A model generated the notes under the pieces. It made no database searches, had not been told where the DNA came from, and saw nothing but the letters and a program-made list of their open reading frames with translations. From the sequence record NC_048173.1: a stretch of DNA of 64,000 nucleotides; one strand, written 5' to 3'. How positions within the stretch are numbered: the stretch's first letter is position 1; every line of letters begins with the position of its first letter. Shown piece after piece: positions 7,463 through 23,905 of the stretch. The position numbers were made by a program, and so were the translations under genes.

Positions 7463-7493
7463 CTTGTTATCCTTCGTTTTACGTGGGGGTCAT

Positions 7494-7528
7494 AAAAAAA
7501 GAACAAAGGTGTGCCCCGAAGGGCACAC
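7494..7528 (-). terminator. Intrinsic terminator ending the peptide/radical SAM transcript
   Basis: GTGTGCCC-TTCG-GGGCACAC followed by CTTTGTTCTTTTTTT on the minus strand. Confidence 0.85.
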
Positions 7529-7530
7529 GC

Positions 7531-8187: not shown

Positions 8188-8729
8188 TCAGTTTTCCCCA
8201 GGATGCCGACGTCTTTCAGCAGACCGTAGTCGAGGAACGAATAGTCCTTCGCCAAGTCATACTGCCAAACGAGGTTAGACACGCGCGATTCCACCGGCGT
8301 TTCTTCAGCAGTGTTGAACACCCCGATATGATCCCACAGCTCAAAGTAGTTGCACTGGTCTTTATTGTCGCGCACCACTTTGATTTTGTTATTCGGGAAC
8401 GACTGCGCCAAAGCAATCAGCGAGTCAACCTGCTTGTTACGCTTTGCACGGAACAGCACAGTCAACTTGCTCGGCGGGGTATCCAGCATACGCTGCTCTA
8501 AGCCGGCGTTACGCAGTTCAGCGTTCGCCAGTGAGTTATGGCCGTTCTCCACACAGTCCAGCTCAATGTGCACGTTCAGCGAGTGACGGATAACCAGCTT
8601 TTTCACTGTGTCGGTGTAGTTCTCTGCTTTACACAGGATGCTTACATCGAACAGCTTATGCTTCGTCAGAAAGGCATCCAGCAGCGTGGTATCAAGCCGA
8701 GTAAAATTGTGAATCATCAATGACTGCAT
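8166..8729 (-). CDS. Hypothetical protein of the radical SAM locus (187 aa)
   Basis: Start moved from the ORF-track 8879 to ATG 8729, which has an AGGA upstream and less overlap with the rSAM gene. No family recognised. Confidence 0.6.
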   Translation of the reverse strand: MQSLMIHNFTRLDTTLLDAFLTKHKLFDVSILCKAENYTDTVKKLVIRHSLNVHIELDCVENGHNSLANAELRNAGLEQRMLDTPPSKLTVLFRAKRNKQVDSLIALAQSFPNNKIKVVRDNKDQCNYFELWDHIGVFNTAEETPVESRVSNLVWQYDLAKDYSFLDYGLLKDVGILGKTECLVMTK

Positions 8730-10038
8730 TAGGCTTTTCCTGTTTTGCATGAACGTGTGGTTGAACAGCCTCTGGTTTCGCGCCAGAGAGTTTCGGAAGT
8801 TTGTTTTCCTGCGAGGCTTTAACACGGCACTCGTAGCAGTTGCACGACAACGGTTTGAACTGGTCACCGTAAGTACCAAAGCGACGTTCCCACCATTGGG
8901 CAGTTAACAGCTTAGCGGTGGTCCAGCCGCACTGACGACGCTCAGAGTGATACTGCTTACGCGCATCTTCTTCGCCATCGCCATTCTCGTACGCCGCGGC
9001 TACGCAGGACGCACAGATGTGTTTGGCCGGGCAACCCAGACAGGCATCAGGATACGACTGCCATTGGGTCTGGACTTCGTTCAGCAGCTTGCCGCCGTCG
9101 GTGTTGACAATCTCGCGACCCACGAGTTTCGCAATTGCCTGACGGGTGGTGACGGTAGACATGAAGCGGTTACAACCGTAGATGTTACGGTCAAAGCCGA
9201 GACAGGTCATGTGAACCGTGGTACCACAGTGCGGTTTCAGACGTTCAGGGTCGTAACGAATCTGATCGTTATGCTGTAACATCTCACGCCATTCCGGAGC
9301 CCACATGTTATCGATGTTCATGCCGCGTGGGGTGATGTGGCCCATCTCAGCAGTCGGGTCTAAGTGCAGACCTTTACCAATCCAGTATTCCAGCACTTCA
9401 ATCATCTGGTTAGAGATGCCGAGCGCCATATCACGTGGAATGATATCTTCGAAAATCATGTTACCGTAAATGGTACCACCGCCAGACTGGTCAATCAGCG
9501 ACTTCATGGACGCCGCGTAGTGCTTCAGCGTGTCATGGGTAAAGGTCGCTTTAATCCCGAGGTCGTTGATTTTCATCGACTTCAGGTAATGATACCCTTC
9601 CAGCGCTTTCTCGTAGGAACCTTTACGAGAGGTGGTGAAGATACGGTGACGGTCGTGGGTTTCCGGCAGACCATCGATTGACACGCCGATAGACAGTTTC
9701 GGATACCAGCGCTCAATGATTGAACGGTTTAACGGCTTATCAAAAAGCGTTCCGTTCGTGGAGATGGAGAACATGTACGGGCGGTTATCACGCGCCGCTA
9801 ACATCTCTGCAGTTTCGAAGGCCGCAATCAGCAGCTTCGGTTGCAGGAACGGTTCCCCACCGATAATGTCGATAATCGCGCCGCCTACATTCGGCTTGCC
9901 GCGGTCACGGTCAAAACAGGCGTGGATGAAGTCAACCACGTCATCTACACGGTTGTTACGCGGGAACTTGCGCTCGTAGCAATAATCGCAATCGAGGTTA
10001 CACGACAAGTTCGTAACAATCTGATACGTTACGTCCAT
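8692..10038 (-). CDS. Radical SAM/SPASM peptide maturase (Cxxx-repeat target type)
   Basis: CNLDCDYC, IIGGEPFL, STNGTL and SIDG..HDRHR core. SPASM Cys set CGTT..NIYGC..CLGCPAKHICASC..C. GAGGGG RBS. Confidence 0.9.
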   Translation of the reverse strand: MDVTYQIVTNLSCNLDCDYCYERKFPRNNRVDDVVDFIHACFDRDRGKPNVGGAIIDIIGGEPFLQPKLLIAAFETAEMLAARDNRPYMFSISTNGTLFDKPLNRSIIERWYPKLSIGVSIDGLPETHDRHRIFTTSRKGSYEKALEGYHYLKSMKINDLGIKATFTHDTLKHYAASMKSLIDQSGGGTIYGNMIFEDIIPRDMALGISNQMIEVLEYWIGKGLHLDPTAEMGHITPRGMNIDNMWAPEWREMLQHNDQIRYDPERLKPHCGTTVHMTCLGFDRNIYGCNRFMSTVTTRQAIAKLVGREIVNTDGGKLLNEVQTQWQSYPDACLGCPAKHICASCVAAAYENGDGEEDARKQYHSERRQCGWTTAKLLTAQWWERRFGTYGDQFKPLSCNCYECRVKASQENKLPKLSGAKPEAVQPHVHAKQEKPNAVIDDSQFYSA

Positions 10039-10051
10039 TACAACATCCCCC

Positions 10052-10927
10052 TCAGGACTGTGGCAAATTTAGGTAGGTGTGTAGATACTTGTAAGCCTCT
10101 ACACCGATGATTTGGGCCATGGCATTACAGCCTGAGTTAACGTAGAAGTCCACGTTCTCATTGTGCTTAATGTCACCGTTTGGTTCTACCAGTTTCAGCT
10201 GACCGCAAGCGTTACAGTTGGTGTGGTCGAAGAACTTCTCCAGACGGAACACCGTGTTGATACCGTTAACGCTGTTGAGATGCTGCATCTGTTCTTCAAT
10301 ACGCTTGTAGCCGTAAATGAAGTTCAGTACGTGGTCCTGATTGAGAGCTTTGTGCATCAGTTTGTCAAACGTCAGGGTCATAGCACCCACACGTAAGTGA
10401 TGCAGAGCAGCATGCAAACGCATGGTGTCTTCAAACCAGCGCGGCTTGCTAACGTGTTCGCGGGTCAGTACACCCCACGTAACCACATTGTCCAGCGCGT
10501 GCATGACTTCAAACGCTTCGTGCGCCCCTTCTTCCACAAACGCCATCAGACTGCGCTCGCCACCTTCGAAATGGTCGATGGAGACGATGATGCGGTCAAA
10601 CGTTTTCAGGAAGTCGAGTTGCGAGAGTTTGAGTTTTCGGCCGTTGGTAAACAGCAGGTGTTTTGCGGAAGGCACTTGCTCACGTGCTTCGCCTACAAAG
10701 TCAACTAACTTCTGGTAGGCCAATAACGGTTCGCCGCCCGTCCACAGGAATTCCTCTACTTGAGGATTTTCTTTTATAATGTCCACCATTGCCTCTTTGT
10801 GTTTTGTTTTCGAAACATCACCCTTGGCCATGTGAGCTGCCCCTCCACAGAAGGAGCAGTTCAGGTTGCACTTAGACGTCAGGGCAATGTCAATCATGGT
10901 AGCAGACGACTTAGGGGTATCGTGCAT
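10052..10927 (-). CDS. Second radical SAM protein (short, Twitch-like C-terminus)
   Basis: CNLNCSFC, WTGGEPLL, FTNG and VSID motifs. C-terminal CNAC..EPNGD..C. Start uncertain (10927 or 10897; the track start 10993 overlaps the upstream gene). Confidence 0.85.
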   Translation of the reverse strand: MHDTPKSSATMIDIALTSKCNLNCSFCGGAAHMAKGDVSKTKHKEAMVDIIKENPQVEEFLWTGGEPLLAYQKLVDFVGEAREQVPSAKHLLFTNGRKLKLSQLDFLKTFDRIIVSIDHFEGGERSLMAFVEEGAHEAFEVMHALDNVVTWGVLTREHVSKPRWFEDTMRLHAALHHLRVGAMTLTFDKLMHKALNQDHVLNFIYGYKRIEEQMQHLNSVNGINTVFRLEKFFDHTNCNACGQLKLVEPNGDIKHNENVDFYVNSGCNAMAQIIGVEAYKYLHTYLNLPQS

Positions 10928-11849
10928 CAGGGTTTTTGTTCCACAGATTTTCCATGAACGCGAATAACGGGTCGGAGACACGAACGTCTTCACCCGGGAC
11001 GATCAGTTTCGGGTCATGGTACGCTTTAAGAATAGCATCCAGCACCTTGTTGCGGTCGTTCAAACGCAGCAGCTCATCCACCGTCACAGTCTGACGGGTA
11101 AAGGAACTGACGGCATTCATCTCTTCGGCCGACAGCAGACCCGCTTCATTGACTTTACCGACCAAGAAGGTCAGTACACGATGTAAGTCAGCGGTAGTGT
11201 TAGGTTGCTCACCGTACTCATACTGCAACAGATAGTTGGTCCACGGCTTACGAATGCGTTTGGTAATCTCATGCGCATCGGTAATTGCGGTCCACTTCAT
11301 ATCACGGTGGTCCCATGTAAATTTATAGGAATACGCGAGCAGGTCGGCCAGACAGTCGATGCCTAACTCTTCGTACCCTTCAACCGGATAGTAACGCTCG
11401 AGGTTGAAATAACCCTCGTCAACGGTACCTTCTTCAACCAGCGTATAATAGAACGGGAACGAAGACGGGTATTCCCAGTTCCACTGACGCTGAATCATCG
11501 GCTTCATGCCGTGTTCTTTGAACGAAGCAAACACCATCTCCAGCGGCATGGAATAGTTCAGCACCGCATCCGTGAAGTAATACTTTTCGTTGACGAGCTT
11601 ACCGACGTATTCGGTTGTGCCATCGAGGTTGTACAGAATCTTAATCCGCAAACCATCCGGCGTGGTAAACTCTTCACGCACTTCTGCGTGATTTAAAATA
11701 TCACGCGGTCGCAGACGAGGGAATTCACCAGGGTTCATGCAAATCAAACGCAGGCGGTCATTCACGTGGTCGTTTACCGCGTCGGGCAGCCCAAGGTGTA
11801 TTGGGTAGTTAAAGTTGGTACGAAACGCCAAGTGTTCATTATTCTTCAC
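10911..11849 (-). CDS. Hypothetical protein of the radical SAM locus (312 aa)
   Basis: GTG start 10 nt after the peptide stop, preceded by TAAGGAG. Aromatic/acidic composition, no family recognised. Confidence 0.8.
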   Translation of the reverse strand: MKNNEHLAFRTNFNYPIHLGLPDAVNDHVNDRLRLICMNPGEFPRLRPRDILNHAEVREEFTTPDGLRIKILYNLDGTTEYVGKLVNEKYYFTDAVLNYSMPLEMVFASFKEHGMKPMIQRQWNWEYPSSFPFYYTLVEEGTVDEGYFNLERYYPVEGYEELGIDCLADLLAYSYKFTWDHRDMKWTAITDAHEITKRIRKPWTNYLLQYEYGEQPNTTADLHRVLTFLVGKVNEAGLLSAEEMNAVSSFTRQTVTVDELLRLNDRNKVLDAILKAYHDPKLIVPGEDVRVSDPLFAFMENLWNKNPDARYP

Positions 11850-11859
11850 GGATAGCTCC

Positions 11860-12069
11860 TTACGATGGCCACGTTACCGCTTTAGCGCCACCTGATGCTG
11901 ACCAGCTGCAGCTGCCGTTACAACGGTAGGCCCCAGCCGGAATATTGTTTAAACGGTTCGCGTTATTCACCGTCCCCCGCGTGGCGATATAGTTATTCGC
12001 AGACGCGGTCGTGATGTACCCTTCGAGACGGGCGATTTGTTGCGCAACCTCGTTCAGTGAAACAGCCAT
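11860..12069 (-). CDS. Short MAVSLN-leader peptide (2 Cys; truncated-core paralog)
   Basis: TAAGGAG RBS. 49-aa leader homologous to the two long peptides, then CNGSCSWSASGGAKAVTWPS. Confidence 0.85.
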   Translation of the reverse strand: MAVSLNEVAQQIARLEGYITTASANNYIATRGTVNNANRLNNIPAGAYRCNGSCSWSASGGAKAVTWPS

Positions 12070-12078
12070 AGCGACTCC

Positions 12079-12477
12079 TTACGGTCCTGAGCAACCAGAG
12101 CATCCCGTACAAGACGACGAACAGCTACCAGAGCAGCCGCCTGAACAGCCTCCCGAACAACTTGTAGAGCACGTACCGGAACAGGTTCCCGTACAGTTAC
12201 CCGAACAACCCCCAGCACAACCACCCGTACAGTTAGACGAGCACGAACCGCCACACGTCCCTGAACAAGTGCCTGTACAACCGCCAGAACATGCAGACCC
12301 GCATGACCAGCTACAAGTGCCGCCACAATGGTAATGGTTGGCGTCTTGACCGGCTAATCGGTCGACGTTGTTTGAAGTTTTACCGCCGATGTACGCTTGA
12401 ACCCCTGCTTCTGTTTTCAGTGCAGCGGATTCAATGTTGCTCATCTGGTTCTTTACTGCATTAAGTGATACAGCCAT
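12079..12477 (-). CDS. Cxxx-repeat Cys/Gly/Ser-rich peptide (putative radical SAM substrate) 2
   Basis: TAAGGAG RBS. 50-aa leader plus 82-aa core with 21 Cys (18 consecutive Cxxx units, then CTG-CSG-CSGP). Confidence 0.9.
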   Translation of the reverse strand: MAVSLNAVKNQMSNIESAALKTEAGVQAYIGGKTSNNVDRLAGQDANHYHCGGTCSWSCGSACSGGCTGTCSGTCGGSCSSNCTGGCAGGCSGNCTGTCSGTCSTSCSGGCSGGCSGSCSSSCTGCSGCSGP

Positions 12478-12488
12478 GGTCGCTCTCC

Positions 12489-12875
12489 TTACATCGGACC
12501 GGAACAGGCAGAACAGCCCGTACAGGAACTAGAACAAGAGCCAGAGCACCCGTGACCACATCCGCCAGAGCACGATGAGGAACAAGCACTACCACAACCA
12601 CCCACGCAGGTGCCGGTACAGGTCCCAGAGCAACTGCCTGAACACGTACCAGAACAACCACCGGAACAGTTACCGGAACAACTCGAGCAACCATAGGAGC
12701 ACCCAGACGAACATGTCCAGCTACAGCTACCGTTACAGCGAATGTCCCCGGGTGACATGCCACCCAGATTGTTTGCGTTAAATGCTTTGGTTGCAACCTG
12801 ATTGTCCACAGAAGGTCCTGTGGCCAAAGACAGTCTCGCAATTCGCGCATTAACGTCATTAAGTGAAACGGCCAT
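12489..12875 (-). CDS. Cxxx-repeat Cys/Gly/Ser-rich peptide (putative radical SAM substrate) 1
   Basis: AAAGGAAG RBS. 46-aa leader plus 82-aa core with 21 Cys, ending CSGSCSSSCTGCSACSGPM. Confidence 0.9.
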   Translation of the reverse strand: MAVSLNDVNARIARLSLATGPSVDNQVATKAFNANNLGGMSPGDIRCNGSCSWTCSSGCSYGCSSCSGNCSGGCSGTCSGSCSGTCTGTCVGGCGSACSSSCSGGCGHGCSGSCSSSCTGCSACSGPM

Positions 12876-12929: not shown

Positions 12930-14129
12930 TTATCTGGTACCTGCAGCCGACTGGAGGTCGTCGCGGGTAGTGAGGCTGTTGTTAACGTGAACAGCCGCTT
13001 GCACCACGCCACCGGTGTTTTTGTTGAGGTACTGGTCGTGTGGGTTAGCTGCAGACTGGTGCGCCGCCAAGGCCGCATTCGTGTTAGCCAATGCCTGTTC
13101 CAGAGCCGCGATGCGATTTTCGAGCCCTTGGTTCGAGTTAGCCATGTTCGCAATCTGCTGTTTCAGGTTACTGATTTCCTGATTAGCGGCCGCCAGTCCC
13201 TGATTAAGGGTACCGAGCTGTTGCGAGAGCAGACCGACCTGCGTTTCCAGCACCAGAATCTCATCCATCAGCTCAGCGATTTGCAGCTGGGTCTTCTGGT
13301 AGTTCTGGTCAACGGTGTTAAGCTGGGTGTTCCACGTGCCAATTGAGCTAACCAGTGCGGCAATCTGCTGCGTTAAGTTAGTGTCGGTTGCGCCCAGTGT
13401 GCCGATATCTTGCAGGACAGCGTTAATGCTACTCTGTACTGTTTGAATCTGTGCCCGGACTTCAGCGGTGGAGTACACATCCAACTGACCACGGGTCAGG
13501 TTGTGAACGTTACCTTCGGCCGTACGGTGCTCTTCTAATGCCGACAGCATCTCTTGACGATACGCTTTAAGCATGTTTTGAATCTGCACCATTTCAGCGG
13601 AAGCGCCGATACGGATAGCATCGTTCAGCTTAGACAGCAGCGTAACAATATATTCAAAACCGAAGAAGTCACCCATGTCGCGGAAGGCAGGTGCGCCCGC
13701 AAACTCATCCGGCACGTCACGCAGTTCAGCGAAGTTAATCGTCGGGTCATCTAAGTTCAGCGTATTGATACACTGAATGATGTTGTCCACGTTCGCGGCA
13801 TACGGGCCACCGACAATCTGAGCCGATGCCGTAATGTCTGCCGGGACTGACGATTTGGTAATGACAATGGCTGTGGCAATCTCACGTCCGCCGGCCTGTT
13901 TGGTCAGGGACGGGTGGAGCAGAATCACTTCGTAGTTGGTACCCCGAACGAGTGGCTGATTAGGCGCATTCACCGGAGCCATTCGAAGCGTATCAACAAA
14001 GAACGGACCTGTCGGGAAAGCAAACGCTCGGTTAACAGTACCGGTACCGAGTTTAATCGGATGCGATACAGCATTACTGAGGTTGGTTCCGAACAGGTCC
14101 AATGGGTATTGCATTGCTACCTTACTCAT
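12930..14129 (-). CDS. Coiled-coil tail-fibre-like virion protein
   Basis: N-terminal YPLDLFGTNLSN domain is shared with the three giant fibre genes. Long heptad region. HRTAEGNVH and HQSAANPHDQYL fibre motifs. Confidence 0.7.
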   Translation of the reverse strand: MSKVAMQYPLDLFGTNLSNAVSHPIKLGTGTVNRAFAFPTGPFFVDTLRMAPVNAPNQPLVRGTNYEVILLHPSLTKQAGGREIATAIVITKSSVPADITASAQIVGGPYAANVDNIIQCINTLNLDDPTINFAELRDVPDEFAGAPAFRDMGDFFGFEYIVTLLSKLNDAIRIGASAEMVQIQNMLKAYRQEMLSALEEHRTAEGNVHNLTRGQLDVYSTAEVRAQIQTVQSSINAVLQDIGTLGATDTNLTQQIAALVSSIGTWNTQLNTVDQNYQKTQLQIAELMDEILVLETQVGLLSQQLGTLNQGLAAANQEISNLKQQIANMANSNQGLENRIAALEQALANTNAALAAHQSAANPHDQYLNKNTGGVVQAAVHVNNSLTTRDDLQSAAGTR

Positions 14130-14184: not shown

Positions 14185-17100
14185 TTACACGCTCAGGGTG
14201 GAATCATGAATCATAACATCAAGGACAGTTGCCGTTGTTGCATCAAAATAGATGTCAACGTACTTGCCGCCCGCGAATGCACGTTCTTCCGTCCAGAACA
14301 TAACCGGAGCTTTCGCCCCGCCCGATTGACGCATTGCCAGAATATAATCTTTCCCCGTAGGGACGGCGATGGTCTGGCCGCCCACTGCATTAGTACCAGT
14401 TAGCGTGGTTGGACTTGCAGGATTAGGTATCTTCACGCCCGTCATTGCAGCATTGGATACCGCGAGTTTTGTCGTACCGTCTTGCACCAGCTCGAACGCA
14501 ATATAGCACGGCGAGTTACCCGGGGCTTCATTAACAACGAAGGCCAGCGCGTTAGGCTGATTTAACAGCGCACCAGTCAGATTCAACGTAGCGTTACCCG
14601 ACAACGTTCCTTTAGAAACGCCGTTAAGGTATACATCCGCTGAATCATCTACTTGCACATTCAACACCAACGATGTTGATGTTGGTGTAAACGTGGTTTT
14701 CGTTGCCCAAGCGGTTCCGGCTGCCAGTTTACTCTCTGGGATGAGGGTAATTGCTGGTGAAGCCAGTGGTGGGCTATAGGCGCTAGCACGTGTCCCAACA
14801 TTCGGCCAAAGTTTCTCGGCATAGTTGGTCAGTAACATCCACGGCGCGGGGGACGCAGGGAAAGACAGGCGCTGGACTGTGTCGAAGTTACCGCCTAACT
14901 GGTTTGCTGTTTCCAGCGCTGCAGCAGTACCGTAAGACTTCGTTAAATCCGCACCCGGACGAGTGATGTTCCAGAATCGTGTAGCATTCTGAGACGTGGC
15001 CCCGTACCCAAAGCGACAACTGCGTGCAAAGGTCGGTGCTGCTGTCACCAAGTCCACTTCCGCGTATTTATACGTGGCTGTGTTTCTCAGCTGACTTAAC
15101 GTTAACCCTTTCTTCGCCGCAATGATGGCTCGGATATTGTCATCGCGTACACCGGTGGTCGGCAGTAGTGCATGTTCTACCGCGATATACAGCATGTTAC
15201 CGCGACGTTCAGCATACACGTGCGCATACCACTTACTCCATGCCAGCAAGTCCGTGGTATCCGCATCCAACGTGGCGATTAACTTAGATGACGCCTGACG
15301 GTAGTTCTCTTTGAGCTGAATCAGACCAGACAGGTTAACGTGCGACTCAATTGAGTTGCCGATAGCCAGACATAACGTCTTCTCGACGTTTGCCGTGGTG
15401 TCTTCCTTCTTCAGCGCAGCAAGCACTACTGCAACCCCGTCGTTGTCACCGTCGTTGGACGTGATAACCGTGTTGAACACATAGTCACCCACCAATTCAT
15501 CCGAGATAAAGCCCACGAACGTTGCGGTGTTTAACGTACATTCAACGACGTCGTCGGCTGCCACGTATTTCCATGCTGCCAGTTCGGAGTCATTCGCCGG
15601 CTGGTCTGCAGTGGAGTTGTTGTGGCTGAAACGGTACCAGCTGTTATAGATGTCTGCGAACGATGGGAAGGCAAACGAGTCTACCGTCCCCAAGTTTTCC
15701 ATGTTCGAGTACAACGTATCTGGCGCAGCCGCACTTGGCAGGTAGTTGTGTGCATAGCGGTTGTCAGCATGACTCAACAGTGCACCTACACGGCCCAGAC
15801 GTTTCACACGGCTGATTTTCGCTTCGGTAATCGCGTTGCTGGATGTTGTTGCATAACCGATATACAACCGGGAGTCAGTATCAGCAAGTTTCGTTTTCGA
15901 GACCAGATACTCCGCCGCTCCAGACGCGTTTAACTGCACATGGAAATAGAGCGTAGCATTCTGGTAGTCCGTAGGGAATAGCGTTTTGAAATCGAACGTC
16001 GCCGCAGGGACAAGGTGGTCTTCCATCTTCGCAAAGAACGGAACCGCTTGCGTGATGTACAGAATCATCCCTTCTGCGACTTGCGGGCCAAAGAGAATTG
16101 TGGGGCGACCACCGGTTTCAAACGCAATACCTTTCCCGCTGTAAACCGTCCCCCCTAGATAAACTCCGAGCATTACAAAACCAATTTTTGCGATCTCATC
16201 CGTTTCCTGAAGATACACATAATCGATTTCATTATTAGACGGGTTAAACGAAATACGCGTGCCTGTCCATGTTGTCAAATCTTGAGAGATTTTCAACAGG
16301 TAACTCAAGTCGGTACTAGAGCTACTGGTATTCACACGACATAGCGTTCTTGTCCTTAATAACCAGCCGTCGGCACGCTTAATCAAACGCATCTGACTCA
16401 TCTCTGCCAAATCATTGAGCGTGACCGCAGACACCCTGAATTTCTCTTCCTTCCACACCTCGACACCACTGATCATCGACAGAGAAATAATTCCATTGTC
16501 AAACGTCATCGGGATACGGTAGAAATAAGTGCTGTTATCAAACCCACCGGCCGTAGCGTTCGGAGTCAGAATACAAGTTTGCAGCACGCAGAGGTTTTGT
16601 CCTCCGAAGTCAAAGATACTCAGCCAAGCGATACGCAGCGTAGGATCAATAGCCAACCAGCCCGGAATTTTCGCGTCTAAGAAGTTTTCAATAGCTGACC
16701 ACTGCTCAGCACTGATAGCAACCCTCTCGTTGGTGATGACGGTGGTGCCTGCAATATTTCGATACGCACGACTTTCTGCCTTTCTAAACGAAGCACCGTT
16801 GAGATAGGATTGGCTACCGTTATAGACTTGTCCCAGGCGACAAATCGCTTCGTAGTCATTTTGCGACACGGTCTCACGATCATTAGACGGCCCCCAACCC
16901 GTATAATCCGGCACACCGTAGGTAGTGTCCGTGTCGTACGCGATGCTCATACACGACCCGGTGCTACGTTGACGAAGAAGCATTTTCTTGGCAGTGCCGC
17001 CCAAAGCCGCCATCCCGCGCATTCTAAGAATGTACGGCGAAGCGTATGGACCAAGCACATTCACACTGTTTCCAATTAAGTTGGTCCAATCGGCATTCCA

Positions 17101-19869
17101 GTGCGCGCTTTCAAACGCGTCAGTATTTGGTAAGCGGAAACGCACCAAAAAGTCTTCTGCATCTGAGTTGCCGATACCGGTGACCCTATCCCCCTGAACG
17201 AACAGGCACATAGTGTACCCGTAGAAAAGATTGTTCGAGGTTTGACCGTATTTCCCTTTCGGGAAGGTCAACCCGGTTTCATCAACACACAACGGGAAGA
17301 AATCGTCGTCGAGCGTGGCCGTTTTCGCGGAGAGATCGATAACATAAGACACCGTCCACTGAGGATCGCTATTTCGAATACCCTGCGCCTGCAACGAAGA
17401 ACGGGCATGCAAACGAACACGAATTTTATTGCCTTTTGCTGCAGCATAAATGTTTCTGCGGCTAAAGCTGATCATATTACGCGAAGTCCATTTCGCGGCC
17501 CCTTCTGGTGTGATGTACCAAAAGTTTGTCGTGTTAGGGTCAGTGGAGTTGGTACCATACGTTGAAAAACGCGCAGCATCACCCGCGGGGTACTTCCCAG
17601 TTAGCGGCACTTTGGACATCAGCAGGTCGGAAGTTTTCCCGACTAGACTTTCATCCAACGTCCAAATACAGGTATAAAAGTCTTGGGGGACCAAGTACAT
17701 TTTAAGCAGGCACACTTTCCCCTCGGTTAACACCAACCGGTCTTCATTGGTGTTAAAGTACGAAGGGGTAATTGGGTCGACTGTTCCGCCATTAAGCGCT
17801 TCCAAGGTCACGCGCGAGACACGGGTGTGTTTCGCCATGTTCATGGTACCGTCAAACATAACCAAATAGTATTTGTCATCGGTCCCTTGGAAAATACCGC
17901 ATTCATCACCAATGACAGTGACCGTTTTGAACTTCACGTTCGGGGCGATAGCTTTTAGCCCCACGGGCACATACTCTACGGTGGTTGGAATCGGATTGGA
18001 AACTGCGCCTGTTTCACTCACATCCGCTGTCCAATACAACACCATCTCGGAGCCGGCATACCCGCTCGTGGCATTACGAAGCACATAGAACTTACCGTTC
18101 TCTTCCCGACCGATGTTTGCCCGAAGTGCGGCTTCCATTTGTTGAGACGAGCCGTCGTAACGACCGGCGGTTGGGATAGGCAGGAAGCCACTGTCTCCGT
18201 AATACGTACCGCTGGCCACCCACGACGGTAACAGGTTGTTGGCTTTGTCTTCCGCCCCATCGATATCCAGCTTTAACTGATAACCGAGTTTAGAGACTGC
18301 CGCCCGTTGAGTCGTGTAGTCGATACCTGCCGCCAAATACGCCAACCCCGACAGAATAGGTGAGGCGGTTGGGACATTCTGCAAGTCTGCGGCGACGTGG
18401 GTGTGGACTTTCAGCGCCTTCGTGGTTAACTGGTCACGGAACACTTGTGTCACTGGCTTGTCAGCCGGTGCTGTGTTGTTGACCTTATCCAGACCAAACG
18501 ACAGTGCCGTCAGGTTAATGGTTTGGGTCGAACCGAAGGCTGCGTTGTTGATTTTGAAAGTCTCATCAACGTAGTTATTCAGTTTCAACAGCAGGTCGTT
18601 CACTCCCTTCTGTGACAGCGCGTAGTTCGGCGCAATAACCTCTACACTGTCTGTCAAACGGAACAGCCCTTCTACGGTATTCGTCGCAGCCGGGGTCTGA
18701 GCCGTCATGTTCAGTGGGGACTGCGTCGAGCCATTACCGCCCATCAACACCGTCGACGTGGACTTGAAGCTCGGTTGAGCATTCGAGTTCAGTGGGGCGT
18801 AAAGGTACAGGTTAATGGACTCTGGGGTAATCAAGAAAGCGCCGTTATAAATCGGACGGACATCTTTCGCCCCAGCAGCATTACCTTTGGAAGGTACGAA
18901 CAGCTCATCATAACCTGCACGGGAGGACACGCCTACCCCACGCTGGTTGTTGTCACTGTCTGCCGCCAGTTCAATGACCGCTTCTGTACCGGTCAACAGG
19001 ATTTTGCCCGCGGTGAACCGCAGGGCAGACTTCCCGTCTTGCGTGGCGTACATCAGCTCATCGTTATTGATAGCACGGAACCGTCCAAAGACTTGGCCCA
19101 TGGTATCTTCGAGCAGCCCATCCACGATACGCTGTGAGATTTTGTGCTCGACCATAATCGCCACTAACTCAGCGAGCGTCTTACTGAACGCTTTCACTGC
19201 GTTGGTTGCGGCATCCCCTGCCGCTAACGCCCCGATTTGTGCCGGGGTGTATTTGTGCTGATGAGGTGTTCTATGGTGCTGTAACAGTTTATCCGCATAC
19301 AGCTTTTGGGCTGCACGAGACAAAGCGGTTAAGGCGGCATTAATCTCAGTGTCGAGTTGACCAGCCTTCGCTTCAATCTTCAGACGGATACCATCAATCG
19401 ACTTCGCCACCTCATCACGCTGTAGCGCTTCGGCAAGCGTTGCGGGTGGGTCAATTGGGTCAATGGTAATTGGGTAGCGCATCAACGATTTCCAGTCGAT
19501 GTTGCGCGGTTCGGTCAGTTCAGGATTAACTAAGAAGATGCCAATGTCCGATTCAGGAACCGAATAAGACGAACCGAGAACCTGAGCTTTGTAGGTAATC
19601 TCGGTTTTGGTCAGTAGCATTATCCCGCCGAAAAGCTGAGCGTTTGCAGCGTGGGCACCCTCTGAGTAATACAACGCGAGGTAGTAATCAATACCTTCAA
19701 ATAACAGATTCCCCGCTGTGTCCTTAACCTCTAAGCCGTTACGAAAGAAGGGCGCCTCGGGAGGCACCACTAAATTGAAACGGTTAGGATAAGTGGACGA
19801 CTTGAGGGAACCTTCCGCGATGTTATCAGGGCTTTCGCCCGTCAAATCTTCGGGATAATGTTTTCTCAT
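14185..19869 (-). CDS. Giant tail-fibre/baseplate-fibre protein (1894 aa)
   Basis: YPEDLTG N-domain. HHRTPHQH, LDKVNNTAPADKPV and HTHVAADL fibre motifs. Beta-rich C-terminal domains. Confidence 0.75.
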   Translation of the reverse strand: MRKHYPEDLTGESPDNIAEGSLKSSTYPNRFNLVVPPEAPFFRNGLEVKDTAGNLLFEGIDYYLALYYSEGAHAANAQLFGGIMLLTKTEITYKAQVLGSSYSVPESDIGIFLVNPELTEPRNIDWKSLMRYPITIDPIDPPATLAEALQRDEVAKSIDGIRLKIEAKAGQLDTEINAALTALSRAAQKLYADKLLQHHRTPHQHKYTPAQIGALAAGDAATNAVKAFSKTLAELVAIMVEHKISQRIVDGLLEDTMGQVFGRFRAINNDELMYATQDGKSALRFTAGKILLTGTEAVIELAADSDNNQRGVGVSSRAGYDELFVPSKGNAAGAKDVRPIYNGAFLITPESINLYLYAPLNSNAQPSFKSTSTVLMGGNGSTQSPLNMTAQTPAATNTVEGLFRLTDSVEVIAPNYALSQKGVNDLLLKLNNYVDETFKINNAAFGSTQTINLTALSFGLDKVNNTAPADKPVTQVFRDQLTTKALKVHTHVAADLQNVPTASPILSGLAYLAAGIDYTTQRAAVSKLGYQLKLDIDGAEDKANNLLPSWVASGTYYGDSGFLPIPTAGRYDGSSQQMEAALRANIGREENGKFYVLRNATSGYAGSEMVLYWTADVSETGAVSNPIPTTVEYVPVGLKAIAPNVKFKTVTVIGDECGIFQGTDDKYYLVMFDGTMNMAKHTRVSRVTLEALNGGTVDPITPSYFNTNEDRLVLTEGKVCLLKMYLVPQDFYTCIWTLDESLVGKTSDLLMSKVPLTGKYPAGDAARFSTYGTNSTDPNTTNFWYITPEGAAKWTSRNMISFSRRNIYAAAKGNKIRVRLHARSSLQAQGIRNSDPQWTVSYVIDLSAKTATLDDDFFPLCVDETGLTFPKGKYGQTSNNLFYGYTMCLFVQGDRVTGIGNSDAEDFLVRFRLPNTDAFESAHWNADWTNLIGNSVNVLGPYASPYILRMRGMAALGGTAKKMLLRQRSTGSCMSIAYDTDTTYGVPDYTGWGPSNDRETVSQNDYEAICRLGQVYNGSQSYLNGASFRKAESRAYRNIAGTTVITNERVAISAEQWSAIENFLDAKIPGWLAIDPTLRIAWLSIFDFGGQNLCVLQTCILTPNATAGGFDNSTYFYRIPMTFDNGIISLSMISGVEVWKEEKFRVSAVTLNDLAEMSQMRLIKRADGWLLRTRTLCRVNTSSSSTDLSYLLKISQDLTTWTGTRISFNPSNNEIDYVYLQETDEIAKIGFVMLGVYLGGTVYSGKGIAFETGGRPTILFGPQVAEGMILYITQAVPFFAKMEDHLVPAATFDFKTLFPTDYQNATLYFHVQLNASGAAEYLVSKTKLADTDSRLYIGYATTSSNAITEAKISRVKRLGRVGALLSHADNRYAHNYLPSAAAPDTLYSNMENLGTVDSFAFPSFADIYNSWYRFSHNNSTADQPANDSELAAWKYVAADDVVECTLNTATFVGFISDELVGDYVFNTVITSNDGDNDGVAVVLAALKKEDTTANVEKTLCLAIGNSIESHVNLSGLIQLKENYRQASSKLIATLDADTTDLLAWSKWYAHVYAERRGNMLYIAVEHALLPTTGVRDDNIRAIIAAKKGLTLSQLRNTATYKYAEVDLVTAAPTFARSCRFGYGATSQNATRFWNITRPGADLTKSYGTAAALETANQLGGNFDTVQRLSFPASPAPWMLLTNYAEKLWPNVGTRASAYSPPLASPAITLIPESKLAAGTAWATKTTFTPTSTSLVLNVQVDDSADVYLNGVSKGTLSGNATLNLTGALLNQPNALAFVVNEAPGNSPCYIAFELVQDGTTKLAVSNAAMTGVKIPNPASPTTLTGTNAVGGQTIAVPTGKDYILAMRQSGGAKAPVMFWTEERAFAGGKYVDIYFDATTATVLDVMIHDSTLSV

Positions 19870-19872
19870 TAC

Positions 19873-22800
19873 TTATTCCTTTTCAAGATTTAGCTGCGTA
19901 ACCACGAAGTCCCAGTTACGCTGGGTCAGGTTCCATGGGTTCTGCATTGCAATCATTGGGATTTTACCGAACTCGTAAGCATACCAATTCGCCACGTTTG
20001 TTTCGAGCGTCTTGGTCGTGTTGTCGTTGTACGTGATGGTAAACTTCGCTTTCACGAAACACGTTAAAGCGCCTGCCGTTGGTTCAGTGGTTACGGTGAA
20101 GTAACCTTTAAAGTTAGCACTCGGCACATAATTGATAGTTGCTGTAGCGTTACCCACCGCACCCGCTTGGTTGGACTTAGCAACCTGTAGACCATCTACC
20201 CACGCGCTTAGTACACCCTGTCCCGCGAGATTCACGGACACAGTTTTGGCGTTGGTCAATAGTCCCGGCTCGATATGCGTTGCGGCATAACCCCGACGAT
20301 TAAGGTTTGCCAATCCGATAGCAGTCCCCGCATCAGTTCCCGGGTTCAGGAAATCATCCGTCAGTACCGGTGTTACCCCAAACGTTGACTCACGCGAACC
20401 CGTCGTCCACAGCCCGTGAGGAACCGCGTACGAGGCAGTGTCGCGTAAAATGTTCGTCGTCTCTTCGGTGAGTATCACCTGTGTGGCAATATCCACGTCC
20501 GCCATCTCTGTACCTAAGAAGAACCCAACACGACCACGTTGGAGTCCGTTCTTTTTCGCCGCATACGCCGACAGCTCAGAGCCACGGATATACGACTTAA
20601 TAAGGCCAGTGTGGTAGTTCAGACGCGTCAGGTATTCCGTTGGGATACTGCAATCAAAGATAGAACCCATGATGCGGTAGCCCAGTTTGCTTGAAGAGGC
20701 GTAACCGACGTACGGCCCTTCAAAGAAACGCGAAATGTCCTGTTCGAACACCAAGGTGCAGAAACGGTGAACCTCAACGCGAGTGTCGTCGTCCACTACC
20801 CCGATAAGGATATTAAGACGCTTTTCTGCCGGGATATAACGGTAGCGTGTAGCCAGTACCCGCGGTTTCTTAATACTCGTACCGTCGACGTGGGTCGGGA
20901 AGTTAAAGCTTGCTGCTACTTCAACATCTTCAGCGCGTACAAATGGGACGAGGTTAGTCCGTGGGATTTCAACATACGGCAACGCAACCGGCTGCGGGGT
21001 CACTTCATTAACGAACGCAATCGATGCCTGTGCTTTCGCCGCGATATCAATCGCAAACAAAGACAGTACCTCGTGCTTACCGTTAACGGGGGCGGCAACA
21101 AACTCGAGAATCCCCGACTCGTTCGACATGAAGGAACCGTCGTAGGTGACTTGTCGTTTTGCCTGCGGGTTGGCCATGTTCTTCCAACGATAAGGAGACT
21201 GACCCTTCACCCCAACCCACACCCGTAGCCCACCTGCCGCGGCAGCGCCTTCTGCTACCACGAGAGTACCTTGCGTACGCAACGCCATTCCCGCCGTGTT
21301 AGAGAACATTGCCACGCTCGGGGTCGAGGTCACTGACTTATCGGCCACACCGTACGGCTCAGTAATCTCCAAACCGGGCACTTTCACATCAGCAGGACTG
21401 TAGTCGCTCGCTGTCGTGTCAATACCGCCGTGGGCGCGCTGGTCAGCAATATGCTCTTGCAGCTCACGGAACTGACCGAAGTCAATCACTTGGTTAAACT
21501 GAATCGGGCCACCTGAGGTAATCACTGCGGTAGCGTTCGTGTCAACGTAACCCAGATACAACATCTCAGTGTTCAGCGAGTCACTCGGTACCGGTGCACC
21601 CACCGCTTGGAATTTACCCAAGGTAACGTTTCCGTAAATAAAGAAACGCATGTTGGCAGTAGGCAGGTTGTTGGCGATGGTGCCGACCTTGGTAGCCGCC
21701 GAACTGTTGTACACAGGTGTAGCGCCGTCCATGACATCGAAGGCAATCGACGCTGGCTTAGTGGTGTCTTCGCACAACGACAGAATAGCAATCGCATGCA
21801 CACCCGGCAGTAACTCGATTTCCACATTCGGATCGGTCGCTGCTTCAATAACCGGGTTTTCATCCACCCAGATAGACACTTTACCCGCAGACCGTACGCG
21901 GATTTTGATAATGTCATCCGTAAAGCGCAAACGCACCTTCGCTGCCAGTCGCACGTTAGCCCCGCCCAAACGGTTATTCGCCGTAGAAACAGCAACCGCT
22001 TGTGGCAATGGGTTAGCCGGCTGGGTGTTATGCACCACACCCGCATTCCAGTTGTTCTCGATACCGCACGCGGTGTAATACCACGTCCCGCTCGGCACCG
22101 CCGCAAGGTTAACCACCCCGTCAAACGTCCCTTCCGCTGAGTCAAGGGCACGAGCCACGAAATAACGGTACGCCGTGGTCGGCGTCAGGTTCCAGCCCGA
22201 TACGTTAAAGGTGACCGACTCCACCGTCGTGAACTCTAAGGTGTCTTTGTACATCACACCGAAGAAACGTTTGTTGATATCCGCCAAACGGTCGTTCAAC
22301 GCTTTAAGTACCGCGGGGGCAACCGCCTGACCGTCTTCCACTTCAGAAAGCTGGGAGGCAATCTTCACGGTACCGTACGCCATGCGGGTGGCTTGCCCAA
22401 TCTGCAGCATTGACCAGTCGTGCTTGTGGTCTTTGGCTACTAAGGCATCCGTACGCGCCTTCTGCGGCGTTGAGAGCGGTTTATTCAAGTCAGCAGTGTT
22501 ATCTACCGAACCCAAGTTTAAATCGCCCTTATCGAGGGTAATGCCGGCACCGGACATCGGCTTGTTGTTAATCAACAGCGTCTTCGGCACCATGTCATTA
22601 AAACCGTCGTTGTACGGCTTACCGGAGGCGGGCGTGGCCGCTACGCCATCAGCCACTGCACCCGGGCCTGTTACGAGTTTTACCTTTCCCGGGAGCGCTT
22701 TGGTGGCTTTCGGGATGTTCAGGTCAGCTTCAAGCGGTGCAGACGGTGTACCTTTCCCTTTGAACGTCATGTTCGTTGAGGAGATATTAATCTGCACGTT

Positions 22801-23895
22801 CTCAGGGTCGCCGTTAACGTCCTTCGACTGATACTTCTTCACCGTACGGCCAGTCAGTAAAGCCACACCGTTTAAGGTGAGCTTATCAACGCCCAATGCT
22901 GTACCGTTGGTGGTAACCCGCAGGGTGTTCGTCCCACAGACATACTCAACGTATTTCGCGCCTGACAAGTCCGTCCCTGCCGCTGCCACAATACCACCTT
23001 GTGTAATCAGCTGAATCTTCGCAGCCGACAGAATCAGTTTGGTGGTGTTGGTGCTATCAGCAATAACGGTGGCTCCGTCCGCAAACTGGAAGGTGCCTTT
23101 AACGTTCTTCGACAGATAGCGGTGGAGGTACAGTTGGATATCCGCATCGGACAAACCCTGTGAGCGAATGTTTTCAATCAGCTCGCGCAGGTTTTTCCCG
23201 TAGGCCAGAAACGTATCCGGAACTTCCAACCCGACCGGGTGCGCGTTAAGCTGGGTCGGGGTGACACTGTGCGGGTCAGTTGCCGCAATGTGCGCCGGGT
23301 AGTTAAACGCTTCGATATCCGTGAACAGTTGGTTCGCCTGTCGCGTTAATGCTTGCAAGTCCGTTTTCAGGTCTTGCACATCGGCATCAACAGCAGCCGC
23401 CACATCATCCACAGCAGATGCGGTGTACTGTTTGTTTTTGGCATCGGCCCAACTGGTATAGCTGGGCTTTTGTGGGAACAGCGCAGGCACCCCATTCAGC
23501 GAACGGTAGCTGGCCGAACGGGGGTTGTTAATGTACTTAATCAGGTAGTCCAGAATCTCTGTCAGCGGGTCGTAGAAATCACCCCCCAACAGATTTCCGT
23601 TGAACACGAGATTACCACTGATTTCAGGATTAATGAACTGGACACCGCAGTAGACCGGTGGTGCATCTGTAGCCAATGAAGCCTTCAGTGCCGACAGCTC
23701 ATAAACGTATTCGTAGTCGGAGCCTTCGTCCAACGGGGTGGTGCTATTCCCGTTGAAGATTTGTAACGCCCCGAAGAACGGGGCATGGCTTAACATGATA
23801 ACACGGTCGGTGTTCTCATTGGACTCGAGAATACGCTCCTCAGTGAAGACGTTAGTAGTCGCCTTCCCTGTCGGGTCGTACGGATATCTAGTCAT
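19873..23895 (-). CDS. Giant tail-fibre-like protein (1340 aa)
   Basis: YPYDPTG N-domain. HIAATDPH, LGSVDNTADLNKPLS and HKHDWS motifs. Paralog of its neighbours. Confidence 0.75.
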   Translation of the reverse strand: MTRYPYDPTGKATTNVFTEERILESNENTDRVIMLSHAPFFGALQIFNGNSTTPLDEGSDYEYVYELSALKASLATDAPPVYCGVQFINPEISGNLVFNGNLLGGDFYDPLTEILDYLIKYINNPRSASYRSLNGVPALFPQKPSYTSWADAKNKQYTASAVDDVAAAVDADVQDLKTDLQALTRQANQLFTDIEAFNYPAHIAATDPHSVTPTQLNAHPVGLEVPDTFLAYGKNLRELIENIRSQGLSDADIQLYLHRYLSKNVKGTFQFADGATVIADSTNTTKLILSAAKIQLITQGGIVAAAGTDLSGAKYVEYVCGTNTLRVTTNGTALGVDKLTLNGVALLTGRTVKKYQSKDVNGDPENVQINISSTNMTFKGKGTPSAPLEADLNIPKATKALPGKVKLVTGPGAVADGVAATPASGKPYNDGFNDMVPKTLLINNKPMSGAGITLDKGDLNLGSVDNTADLNKPLSTPQKARTDALVAKDHKHDWSMLQIGQATRMAYGTVKIASQLSEVEDGQAVAPAVLKALNDRLADINKRFFGVMYKDTLEFTTVESVTFNVSGWNLTPTTAYRYFVARALDSAEGTFDGVVNLAAVPSGTWYYTACGIENNWNAGVVHNTQPANPLPQAVAVSTANNRLGGANVRLAAKVRLRFTDDIIKIRVRSAGKVSIWVDENPVIEAATDPNVEIELLPGVHAIAILSLCEDTTKPASIAFDVMDGATPVYNSSAATKVGTIANNLPTANMRFFIYGNVTLGKFQAVGAPVPSDSLNTEMLYLGYVDTNATAVITSGGPIQFNQVIDFGQFRELQEHIADQRAHGGIDTTASDYSPADVKVPGLEITEPYGVADKSVTSTPSVAMFSNTAGMALRTQGTLVVAEGAAAAGGLRVWVGVKGQSPYRWKNMANPQAKRQVTYDGSFMSNESGILEFVAAPVNGKHEVLSLFAIDIAAKAQASIAFVNEVTPQPVALPYVEIPRTNLVPFVRAEDVEVAASFNFPTHVDGTSIKKPRVLATRYRYIPAEKRLNILIGVVDDDTRVEVHRFCTLVFEQDISRFFEGPYVGYASSSKLGYRIMGSIFDCSIPTEYLTRLNYHTGLIKSYIRGSELSAYAAKKNGLQRGRVGFFLGTEMADVDIATQVILTEETTNILRDTASYAVPHGLWTTGSRESTFGVTPVLTDDFLNPGTDAGTAIGLANLNRRGYAATHIEPGLLTNAKTVSVNLAGQGVLSAWVDGLQVAKSNQAGAVGNATATINYVPSANFKGYFTVTTEPTAGALTCFVKAKFTITYNDNTTKTLETNVANWYAYEFGKIPMIAMQNPWNLTQRNWDFVVTQLNLEKE

Positions 23896-23905
23896 TACGA
23901 ATCCT

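What the first reader, a model, noticed from the sequence alone, without database searches (positions are those of the whole stretch)
12930..14129. A 'tipless' tail-fibre protein immediately upstream of the Cys peptides
It has the same N-terminal YPxDxxG attachment domain as the three giant fibres, then a long coiled coil and an H..ANPHDQYL fibre motif. It stops about 30 aa later without any receptor-binding domain. Inference: the separately encoded Cys-rich peptides could supply the distal part, analogous to a separate adhesin capping a fibre.
Basis: partly seen in the sequence, partly recalled or inferred. Interest (0 to 1): 0.65.

Follow-up and report, generated by a model that had tools for sequence, protein, structure and literature searches.

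The report
Short coiled-coil baseplate fibre without a tip
This gene of the giant Erwinia phage Derbicus encodes a conserved tail protein with a baseplate anchor, a rigid 20-nm coiled-coil stalk and no host-binding head; whether the cysteine-repeat mini-proteins encoded next to it form its missing tip is plausible but unproven.

Summary
ORF 12930-14129(-) is Derbicus gp163 (399 aa). It has YPLDLFG at residues 8-14 and an N-terminal domain shared, at profile level, with the three giant neighbours gp164-166. An unbroken 19-heptad coiled coil spans 224-357. The motif HQSAANPHDQYL sits at 357-368, and only 31 residues follow.

It is the ortholog of SPN3US gp167, which published mass spectrometry places in the tail. 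Its N-terminal module is homologous to phiKZ gp131/133/134/135. A 2026 cryo-EM atlas puts those N-domains in six-membered fibre roots under gp130, and the Derbicus gp130 homolog lies next door. The family has a fixed length (395-399 aa, essentially no indels). Its last ~40 residues are the best conserved part.

Circumstantial support:
- The first Cys gene starts about 55-70 bp downstream in every phage record where it was detected.
- gp159, a protein specific to the cluster, has nearly the same distribution among phages as gp163.
- Natural proteins exist that fuse an anchor, a coiled coil and the same Cys repeat.
- In RSF1-like phages the short fibre's C-end swaps together with a radical SAM/peptide cassette.

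Other agents of this scan had already noted the Cys/radical SAM module on this same window.

The parts
13680..14129 (-). gp163 residues 1-150: gp131-type N-terminal anchor domain (YPLDLFG at 8-14)
   Evidence: BLASTP to phiKZ gp134 E=2e-11 and gp131 E=2e-7. Profile-level paralogy with gp164-166. AF2 gives a beta-rich domain at 20-105 with pLDDT 70-89.
13530..13679 (-). residues 151-200: amphipathic helix following the anchor domain; candidate contribution to a multi-helix fibre-root bundle
   Evidence: AF2/DSSP helices 154-174 and 179-203, at low pLDDT. This stretch aligns with phiKZ gp134. The phiKZ atlas describes six N-domains plus a six-helix bundle (PMC13250141). The assignment to a bundle is an inference.
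13470..13529 (-). residues 201-220: first H-motif joint (H201, G206, N207, V208 and H209 invariant)
   Evidence: Invariant columns in A2. The same motif type occurs in phiKZ gp131/133/134/135 and in the shaft repeats of P0030 and P0031.
13062..13469 (-). residues 221-356: continuous coiled-coil stalk, 19 heptads, about 20 nm; fixed length across the family
   Evidence: Register analysis: a = I/L/V and d = L/V/T, with conserved D249(a), Y277(a) and H357(d). Period 3.5. No indels in 21 orthologs. Best PDB profile hits are trimeric coiled coils: reovirus sigma-1 and P22 gp26.
12933..13061 (-). residues 357-399: conserved terminal joint (second H-motif, then YL-x-K-x-x-GG and a short strand-like tail); the protein ends here
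   Evidence: Together with the N-domain, the best conserved region (61% mean pairwise identity against 39% for the coil). 68-79% identical in phages whose whole protein is about 46% identical. Among 50,697 phage records it was found only at the C-terminus of gp163 orthologs.
12489..12875 (-). Cys-repeat protein A (128 aa); starts 54 nt after the gp163 stop codon; candidate distal partner
   Evidence: phrog_6085, E=4.5e-43. Orthologous trio in SPN3US, L006 and L007. The RefSeq gp162 annotation reads the wrong frame.
12079..12477 (-). Cys-repeat protein B (132 aa)
   Evidence: phrog_6085, E=2.1e-40. Alignments A3 and A4. RefSeq gp161 reads the wrong frame.
11860..12069 (-). Cys-repeat protein C, short form (69 aa, gp160)
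   Evidence: phrog_6085, E=2.4e-24. A short third paralog is conserved in all four lineages examined.
10911..11849 (-). gp159 (312 aa, phrog_8030, unknown function); specific to this cluster, with nearly the same phage distribution as gp163
   Evidence: 62 phage records, all with at least 80% coverage, and the same host genera as the 64 full-length gp163 records.
8692..10993 (-). two radical SAM enzymes (gp158 and gp157)
   Evidence: Pfam PF04055 at 6.7e-11 and 9.3e-12. The SPN3US ortholog gp163 is 'Non-virion' by mass spectrometry (PMC10052503 Table S2).
14185..27535 (-). three giant fibre paralogs gp164 (1894 aa), gp165 (1340 aa) and gp166 (1209 aa), sharing the anchor domain
   Evidence: The SPN3US orthologs gp168-170 are tail proteins (PMC5694885, PMC10052503).
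27512..28852 (+). gp167, homolog of phiKZ gp130, the baseplate protein under which the phiKZ fibre roots sit
   Evidence: BLASTP E=2e-11 to phiKZ gp130. SPN3US gp171 is listed as the phiKZ ORF130 homolog, essential and tail-associated (PMC5105663).

Best explanation
gp163 is a structural tail protein. It is the short member of the four gp131-type fibre paralogs of this phage.

Residues 1-~200 (a beta-rich domain plus a helix) anchor it, together with the N-terminal modules of gp164-166, in a multi-subunit fibre root beneath gp167, the phiKZ gp130 homolog, at the rim of the baseplate. Residues 224-357 form an uninterrupted, length-constrained coiled-coil stalk of about 20 nm. It is homo-oligomeric, most likely trimeric. 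An invariant two-histidine motif sits at each end of the stalk.

The chain then ends in a 43-residue conserved joint and has no receptor-binding domain of its own. That joint either closes the stalk or docks a separately encoded partner. The adjacent Cys-repeat proteins are the leading candidate partner (about 0.3).

Shown: sequence anatomy, paralogy, homology to the phiKZ modules, conservation pattern, and tail location of the SPN3US ortholog. Inferred: oligomeric state, co-assembly with the giant paralogs, possible metal binding by the histidines, and any partner.
For: - Identity of the window and annotation.
- Anatomy.
- Four and only four paralogs in the genome.
- Homology of residues 1-265 to phiKZ gp134 (2e-11), gp135 (1e-11), gp133 (5e-7) and gp131 (2e-7; 9e-7).
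- gp167 is homologous to phiKZ gp130 (2e-11).
- The phiKZ atlas shows six gp131-like N-domains plus a six-helix bundle under gp130, and proposes gp131x3+gp133+gp134+gp135 (PMC13250141).
- No transposon insertions were recovered in phiKZ gp131-135 (bioRxiv 10.1101/2025.11.23.690004).
- SPN3US gp167 gave 293 PSM in wild-type virions against 1.7 in tailless particles and is labelled Tail. Its PSM per kDa is about twice that of gp168 and gp169 (PMC10052503 Table S2). See also PMC5694885 Suppl. Table 1.
- The giant paralogs have no long coiled coil after the shared module, so the gp163 coil must pair with itself.
Against: - There is no structure or proteomics for Derbicus itself.
- The AF2 monomer model is poor (mean pLDDT 57), and Foldseek against the PDB found nothing.
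- The phiKZ hexamer composition is itself only a 'candidate', from 4.4-4.6 A docking.
- The a=Ile/d=Leu core pattern is not diagnostic of a trimer.
- The roughly 2:1 PSM ratio fits 3:1:1:1 only loosely.
- Pairwise BLAST to the giant paralogs is weak.
Confidence: 0.7

Rival explanations
1. Split fibre. The conserved C-terminal joint of the gp163 stalk docks the short N-terminal helices of the Cys-repeat proteins A, B and C, possibly as a heterotrimer. After radical SAM maturation these form the distal tip, so shaft and tip are encoded separately, like T4 gp36/gp37 or gp37/gp38.
For: - The first Cys gene starts about 55-70 bp after the gp163 stop in the phage records compared by coordinates, out of 32 in which the leader was detected. 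The same order holds in metagenomic lineages L006 and L007.
- gp159 and full-length gp163 have nearly the same distribution (62 against 64 records, same host genera).
- The C-terminal 40 aa are among the most conserved parts of gp163.
- A profile search found 698 proteins. Many longer ones end in the same helix + NAxxLxG + Cxxx-repeat module. They include P0134 (anchor + long coiled coil + Cys tip) and P0066 and P0153, which hit PHROG tail-fibre families.
- In RSF1-like phages, L008 has a short-ended fibre plus small Cys/His peptides and three radical SAM genes. L009 has the same fibre ending in Peptidase_S74 and no radical SAM genes. The surrounding genes are 66-78% identical.
Against:
- None of the best 150 Cys-repeat proteins resembles gp163.
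- All SPN3US-like phages are one clade with fixed synteny, so co-occurrence counts as a single event.
- The RSF1-type cluster is not demonstrably orthologous.
- The Cys proteins could instead mount on the giant fibres or elsewhere.
Confidence: 0.3
2. Stand-alone strut or whisker. The last 43 residues are only a self-folding closure of the oligomer, acting like a foldon, and nothing docks on them. gp163 is a fixed-length spacer or brace in the fibre root. The Cys proteins belong elsewhere.
For: - The strict length constraint with no indels suggests a ruler or strut.
- Related short paralogs (RSF1 ORF067, P0030) also end in a short conserved C-terminal peptide without a distal domain.
- The conserved C-terminus is equally expected for a folding nucleus.
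Against: - No sequence similarity to the T4 foldon or to any PDB chain.
- The final motif (NPH-x-QYL-x-K-x-x-GG) resembles internal joints that are followed by more fibre in paralogs such as gp165.
- This model leaves the tight linkage to the Cys/radical SAM cassette unexplained.
Confidence: 0.35
3. Fibritin-like assembly helper. gp163 works like T4 wac, a coiled-coil protein that promotes attachment or retraction of the large fibres rather than contacting the host.
For: - The architecture is similar: anchor, coiled coil, short C-terminus.
- A weak PHROG hit to fibritin neck whisker (phrog_1056, E=0.0014).
- The SPN3US ortholog is more abundant per kDa than the giant fibres.
Against: - The PHROG hit is coiled-coil composition only.
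- The N-terminal domain is of the baseplate gp131 type, not a neck protein.
- The ortholog is absent from tailless heads.
- No foldon similarity.
Confidence: 0.15

Closest known systems
phiKZ gp133/gp134/gp135 (and gp131) fibre-root paralogs
   Same: Homologous N-terminal domain, helix and H-x-NPH joint. Four paralogs per genome. The genes lie next to, and diverge from, the gp130 homolog. Virion tail location.
   Different: The phiKZ short paralogs are about 460 aa with a roughly 180-aa C-terminal domain. gp163 replaces that domain with a 19-heptad coiled coil and a 43-aa end. In phiKZ there is one long and three short paralogs; here there are three giants and one short. phiKZ has no radical SAM/Cys cluster in the stretch examined.
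Salmonella phage SPN3US gp167 (ortholog)
   Same: 46% identical over the full length, with the same length and synteny. Detected in virions and assigned to the tail by mass spectrometry.
   Different: No function has been proposed for it in the papers read here. It was not included in 'paralog family C' with gp168-170.
T4 fibritin (wac)
   Same: An anchor domain, a long parallel coiled coil, and a very short C-terminal element instead of a binding domain.
   Different: Fibritin sits at the neck, has a segmented coiled coil, and ends in the foldon. No sequence similarity was found here, and the gp163 anchor is of a baseplate type.
End-to-end or capped fibres (T4 gp36-gp37; gp37 with the gp38 adhesin of T2-type phages)
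   Same: The gene for a small distal component lies directly downstream of the shaft gene. The shaft itself lacks the final binding element.
   Different: No contact has been demonstrated.
Reovirus sigma-1 and P22 gp26 trimeric coiled-coil fibres
   Same: Best PDB profile matches (2e-7 for sigma-1; 1.5e-4 for gp26) fall over the stalk region.
   Different: The similarity is in coiled-coil composition and periodicity only. It is not homology of the terminal domains.

Membership tests
phiKZ gp131-like N-terminal fibre-root family | N-terminal domain homologous to gp131-N/gp133-N/gp134-N/gp135-N | tested here: met
   BLASTP: gp134 2e-11 over residues 1-265, gp135 1e-11, gp133 5e-7, gp131 2e-7 to 9e-7. 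tblastn hits to PhiPA3 gp154 and 201phi2-1.
phiKZ gp131-like N-terminal fibre-root family | A helix after the domain that can join the helical bundle, followed by an H-x-N-P/V-H joint | tested here: met
   DSSP helices 154-203 in the AF2 model, at low confidence. The H-motif at 201-209 is invariant and aligns with the gp134 and gp131 motifs.
phiKZ gp131-like N-terminal fibre-root family | Encoded in a paralog cluster beside the gp130 homolog | tested here: met
   gp163-166 lie in tandem on the minus strand, with gp167 divergent from them. gp167 against phiKZ gp130: E=2e-11.
phiKZ gp131-like N-terminal fibre-root family | Present in the virion tail/baseplate | not testable with these tools
   Shown only for the SPN3US ortholog gp167 in published mass spectrometry (Tail; PMC10052503 Table S2). 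No data exist for Derbicus.
phiKZ gp131-like N-terminal fibre-root family | Co-assembly of six N-domains from several paralogs into one root | not testable with these tools
The phiKZ composition is itself only a candidate model.
T4 fibritin (wac) family | C-terminal foldon | tested here: not met
   phmmer of the last 46 aa against all PDB chains, which include many foldon fusions, gave no such hit.
T4 fibritin (wac) family | Attachment at the neck/collar | tested here: not met
   The anchor domain is the baseplate gp131 type. The ortholog is absent from tailless heads.
Split fibre with a separately encoded distal cap | Distal-component gene immediately downstream, co-inherited with the shaft | tested here: met
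Split fibre with a separately encoded distal cap | Physical contact between the shaft C-terminus and the cap N-terminus | not testable with these tools
Split fibre with a separately encoded distal cap | The cap is present in the virion | not tested
   In the SPN3US annotation the three Cys ORFs are missing or read in the wrong frame. If the mass-spectrometry searches used those annotated proteins, as is likely, published proteomes could not have detected them.

The most novel reading that the evidence does not exclude
gp163 is the shaft of a two-part fibre. Its tip would be a trimer, possibly a heterotrimer, of three separately encoded Cxxx-repeat mini-proteins that two phage radical SAM enzymes crosslink before or during docking onto the conserved gp163 C-terminal joint. 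That would be a virion adhesin built by RiPP-like chemistry. An analogous arrangement would have arisen in RSF1-like jumbo phages.
Probability: 0.25. Interest if true: 0.8.

Novelty: new variant of a known kind. Interest (0 to 1): 0.5.

Why it matters
How SPN3US-like jumbo phages recognise their hosts is not understood, and their peripheral baseplate is unresolved. Assigning gp163/gp167 to the gp131-type fibre root gives this clade a concrete model: one short coiled-coil paralog plus three giants. That model can be tested against the new phiKZ map. If the stalk really carries the radical-SAM-matured Cys-repeat proteins, it would be the first fibre tip made by enzymatic peptide crosslinking. 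It would also explain why radical SAM genes sit inside the tail-fibre modules of several jumbo-phage lineages.

Tried and rejected
This gives no verdict on binding.
- The AF2 monomer of gp163 with 21 orthologs had mean pLDDT 57. Only the N-domain (20-105) and part of the coil were confident. Foldseek against the PDB gave no match with E<=0.001. The PDB copy reaches 8 April 2026, so any phiKZ atlas models released after that date would not be in it.
- The PDB profile search gave only coiled-coil matches.
- Foldon resemblance of the C-termini of gp163 and of RSF1 ORF067, which I recalled from memory, was not supported by phmmer against the PDB.
- phmmer of gp163 against the 150 best Cys-repeat proteins found no hit, so no literal gp163-Cys fusion was found.
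- The ESM Atlas search on residues 340-399 scored at most 0.87. The nearest named clusters were phage-fibre segments at 0.77-0.79, which is chance level.
- Absence of SPN3US gp166 from virion proteomes was considered as evidence against the cap model. I rejected it because annotated gp166 is a wrong-frame ORF and the other two Cys ORFs are unannotated.
- A neck-whisker location is unlikely given the baseplate-type anchor and the tail assignment.

Full report
**Identity of the window.** The window matches Erwinia phage Derbicus at 100% identity (NC_048173, a 224-kb jumbo phage; window base 1 = record base 124001). The finding is gp163, annotated 'virion structural protein'. On the minus strand the gene order is:
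- gp166, gp165, gp164: giants of 1209, 1340 and 1894 aa
- gp163
- three Cys-repeat ORFs
- gp159
- two radical SAM genes
- gp156
- a DUF4376 protein

The gene gp167 diverges upstream on the plus strand.

**Observation.**
- YPLDLFG lies at residues 8-14.
- There is a first histidine motif at 201-209 and a second at 357-364, inside HQSAANPHDQYL. Only 31 residues follow.
- The N-terminal domain is shared with the giants at profile level. The giants hit the gp163 family profile phrog_2163 at 8e-31, 6e-27 and 3.5e-18. A whole-genome scan finds exactly these four places.
- Pairwise BLAST is weak: E=0.001 for gp164, and nothing significant for the others.
- Between residues 224 and 357 the 21 aligned orthologs keep one uninterrupted heptad register. 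Position a is I/L/V and position d is L/V/T, with three conserved odd core residues: D249, Y277 and H357. That is 19 heptads, or about 20 nm.
- The giants have no comparable coil after the shared module, so this coil must pair with copies of itself.
- No Pfam, PHROG or PDB match indicates a distal domain.

**Family.** Full-length relatives are all 395-399 aa. The alignment has essentially no indels: one gapped column, plus differences of up to four residues at the extreme C-terminus. There are 64 phage records with at least 80% coverage, all in SPN3US-like jumbo phages of Erwinia, Salmonella, Cronobacter, Escherichia and Proteus. Conservation is uneven (mean pairwise identity):
- N-domain: 58%
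- C-terminal 39 residues: 61%
- helix 151-200: 42%
- coil: 39%

The last 38 residues are 68-79% identical in phages whose whole protein is about 46% identical. Among 50,697 phage records this module occurs only at the C-terminus of these orthologs. A fixed length with a free-drifting coil sequence suggests a ruler-like stalk. A conserved end suggests a folding nucleus or an interface.

**What is known about relatives.** The SPN3US ortholog is gp167.
- It was detected in virions at 70% sequence coverage and was not labelled as a head protein (PMC5694885 Suppl. Table 1).
- It gave 293 PSM in wild-type virions against 1.7 in tailless particles and was assigned 'Tail' (PMC10052503 Table S2).
- Its PSM per kDa is about 20, against 8.5 for gp168 and 11.5 for gp169. 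That is roughly a two-fold molar excess.
- No function is proposed for it in the papers read here, and it was not counted in 'paralog family C' (gp168-170).

Residues 1-265 of gp163 align with the phiKZ paralogs, including the histidine joint: gp134 (2e-11), gp135 (1e-11), gp133 (5e-7) and gp131 (2e-7 to 9e-7). Derbicus gp167 is homologous to phiKZ gp130 (2e-11). This agrees with the published pairing of SPN3US gp171 with ORF130 (PMC5105663).

The 2026 phiKZ structural atlas (PMC13250141) shows twelve fibre roots beneath gp130. Each root has six gp131-like N-domains and a six-helix bundle. The proposed composition is gp131x3 + gp133 + gp134 + gp135. No transposon insertions were recovered in phiKZ gp131-135.

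By analogy, the four Derbicus paralogs most likely co-assemble in such roots. One arrangement, gp163x3 plus one each of gp164-166, would fit the roughly 2:1 abundance loosely. This is an inference.

**Structure prediction.** The AF2 monomer model was weak (mean pLDDT 57). It gave a beta-rich domain at 20-105 (pLDDT 70-89), helices at 154-203 and 221-359, and a disordered end, as expected for a part that folds only in an oligomer. Foldseek against the PDB found nothing. The PDB profile search returned trimeric coiled-coil fibres (reovirus sigma-1, P22 gp26) through coil similarity only.

**The 'missing tip' hypothesis.** I could not run the decisive complex prediction. The indirect evidence is as follows.

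1. *Synteny.* In the records compared by coordinates, the first Cys gene begins about 55-70 bp after the gp163 stop codon; the leader was detectable in 32 records. The same long-long-short trio follows gp163 in SPN3US and in two metagenomic lineages at about 44% identity. Each of the three paralogs has its own ortholog across lineages.

2. *Distribution.* gp159, the protein specific to this cluster, is found in 62 records with the same host genera as the 64 gp163 records, and at the same divergence. These phages form one clade, so this counts as a single evolutionary event.

3. *Natural fusions.* A profile of the Cys proteins found 698 proteins in 1.84 billion. Many are longer proteins that end in the same module: a short helix, then NAxxLxG...YYR, then the Cxxx repeat.
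   - P0134 (475 aa) is a small N-domain, a long coiled coil and this tip.
   - P0066 and P0153 also match PHROG tail-fibre families.
- So the Cys module is a fibre tip elsewhere.
   - None of the 150 best hits resembles gp163 itself.

4. *A cassette swap in RSF1-like phages.* Loci L008 and L009 share a gp130 homolog (78% identity), a muramidase (66%) and the short fibre (68% over residues 1-500). L008's fibre ends in a short peptide. It is followed by small His- and Cys-repeat ORFs (one ends in CNCNCNCNC) and three radical SAM genes. L009's fibre ends in a Peptidase_S74 chaperone domain and has no radical SAM genes. RSF1 itself has the short-ended form and radical SAM genes. The fibre's C-end and the peptide/radical SAM cassette therefore travel together. 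However, that cassette is not demonstrably orthologous to the Derbicus one.

5. *Published proteomes are silent.* In SPN3US, annotated 'gp166' is a wrong-frame ORF and the other two Cys genes are unannotated.

**Counter-arguments.** A conserved end is equally expected for a self-closing cap. The Cys proteins might mount on the giants or elsewhere. The recalled likeness to the T4 foldon was not found by sequence search.

**Further inference.** The closing motif (NPH-x-QYL-x-K-x-x-GG) resembles internal joints that are followed by more fibre, for example around residues 255-275 of gp165. This is why 'tipless' is a fair description. Each end of the coil carries two invariant histidines (H201/H209 and H357/H364). 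In a trimer that would give six ligands per site, reminiscent of the iron sites in the T4 gp37 tip.

**Verdict.** The protein is real and conserved, and its ortholog is a proven tail component. It belongs to the gp131-type fibre-root family but has a distinct architecture: coiled-coil stalk, terminal joint, no distal domain.

Noticed in passing
window 12054-12875 (-); L002 10269-11298 (+): Public annotations misread the Cys-repeat genes. Derbicus gp162 and gp161 are annotated in the wrong frame. SPN3US 'gp166' is a wrong-frame ORF, and the other two SPN3US Cys ORFs (130 aa and 68 aa) are not annotated. The correct frames are conserved in four lineages.
   Followed up: yes
L008 12035-12643 (+), metagenome-assembled RSF1-like phage: Downstream of the short fibre lie a 127-aa protein with HNHT and HGHS motifs and a 70-aa ORF ending in CNCNCNCNCNC. 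These are followed by a 304-aa protein and three radical SAM genes. This is a different Cys-repeat peptide type at the same genomic position.
   Followed up: partly
L003 12655-13215 (+), Ralstonia phage RSF1 ORF071: A 186-aa protein inside the RSF1 radical SAM cluster ends in a short Cxxx repeat (CHSSCHSSCHGS). A GIY-YIG nuclease gene and a cupin gene lie between the short fibre ORF067 and this cluster.
   Followed up: no
window 14185-27535 (-): The three giant paralogs share internal segments with each other: gp164 1287-1375 with gp166 787-875 at 37% identity, and gp165 167-512 with gp166 376-710. This raises the possibility that they form one hetero-oligomeric fibre rather than three separate homotrimers.
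   Followed up: partly
window 6770-8879 (-): Downstream of the radical SAM genes lie gp156 and gp155, then an annotated tail assembly chaperone (gp154). The counterparts of gp155 in SPN3US, L006 and L007 carry DUF4376; gp155 itself was not scanned. The same order holds in those three loci, so the whole block looks like one fibre-assembly cassette.
   Followed up: no
P0032-P0037 (1582-1803 aa, from the representative library): The strongest hits of the Cys-repeat profile are very large proteins with 7-11 separate Cys-repeat stretches. Their origin and nature were not examined.
   Followed up: no
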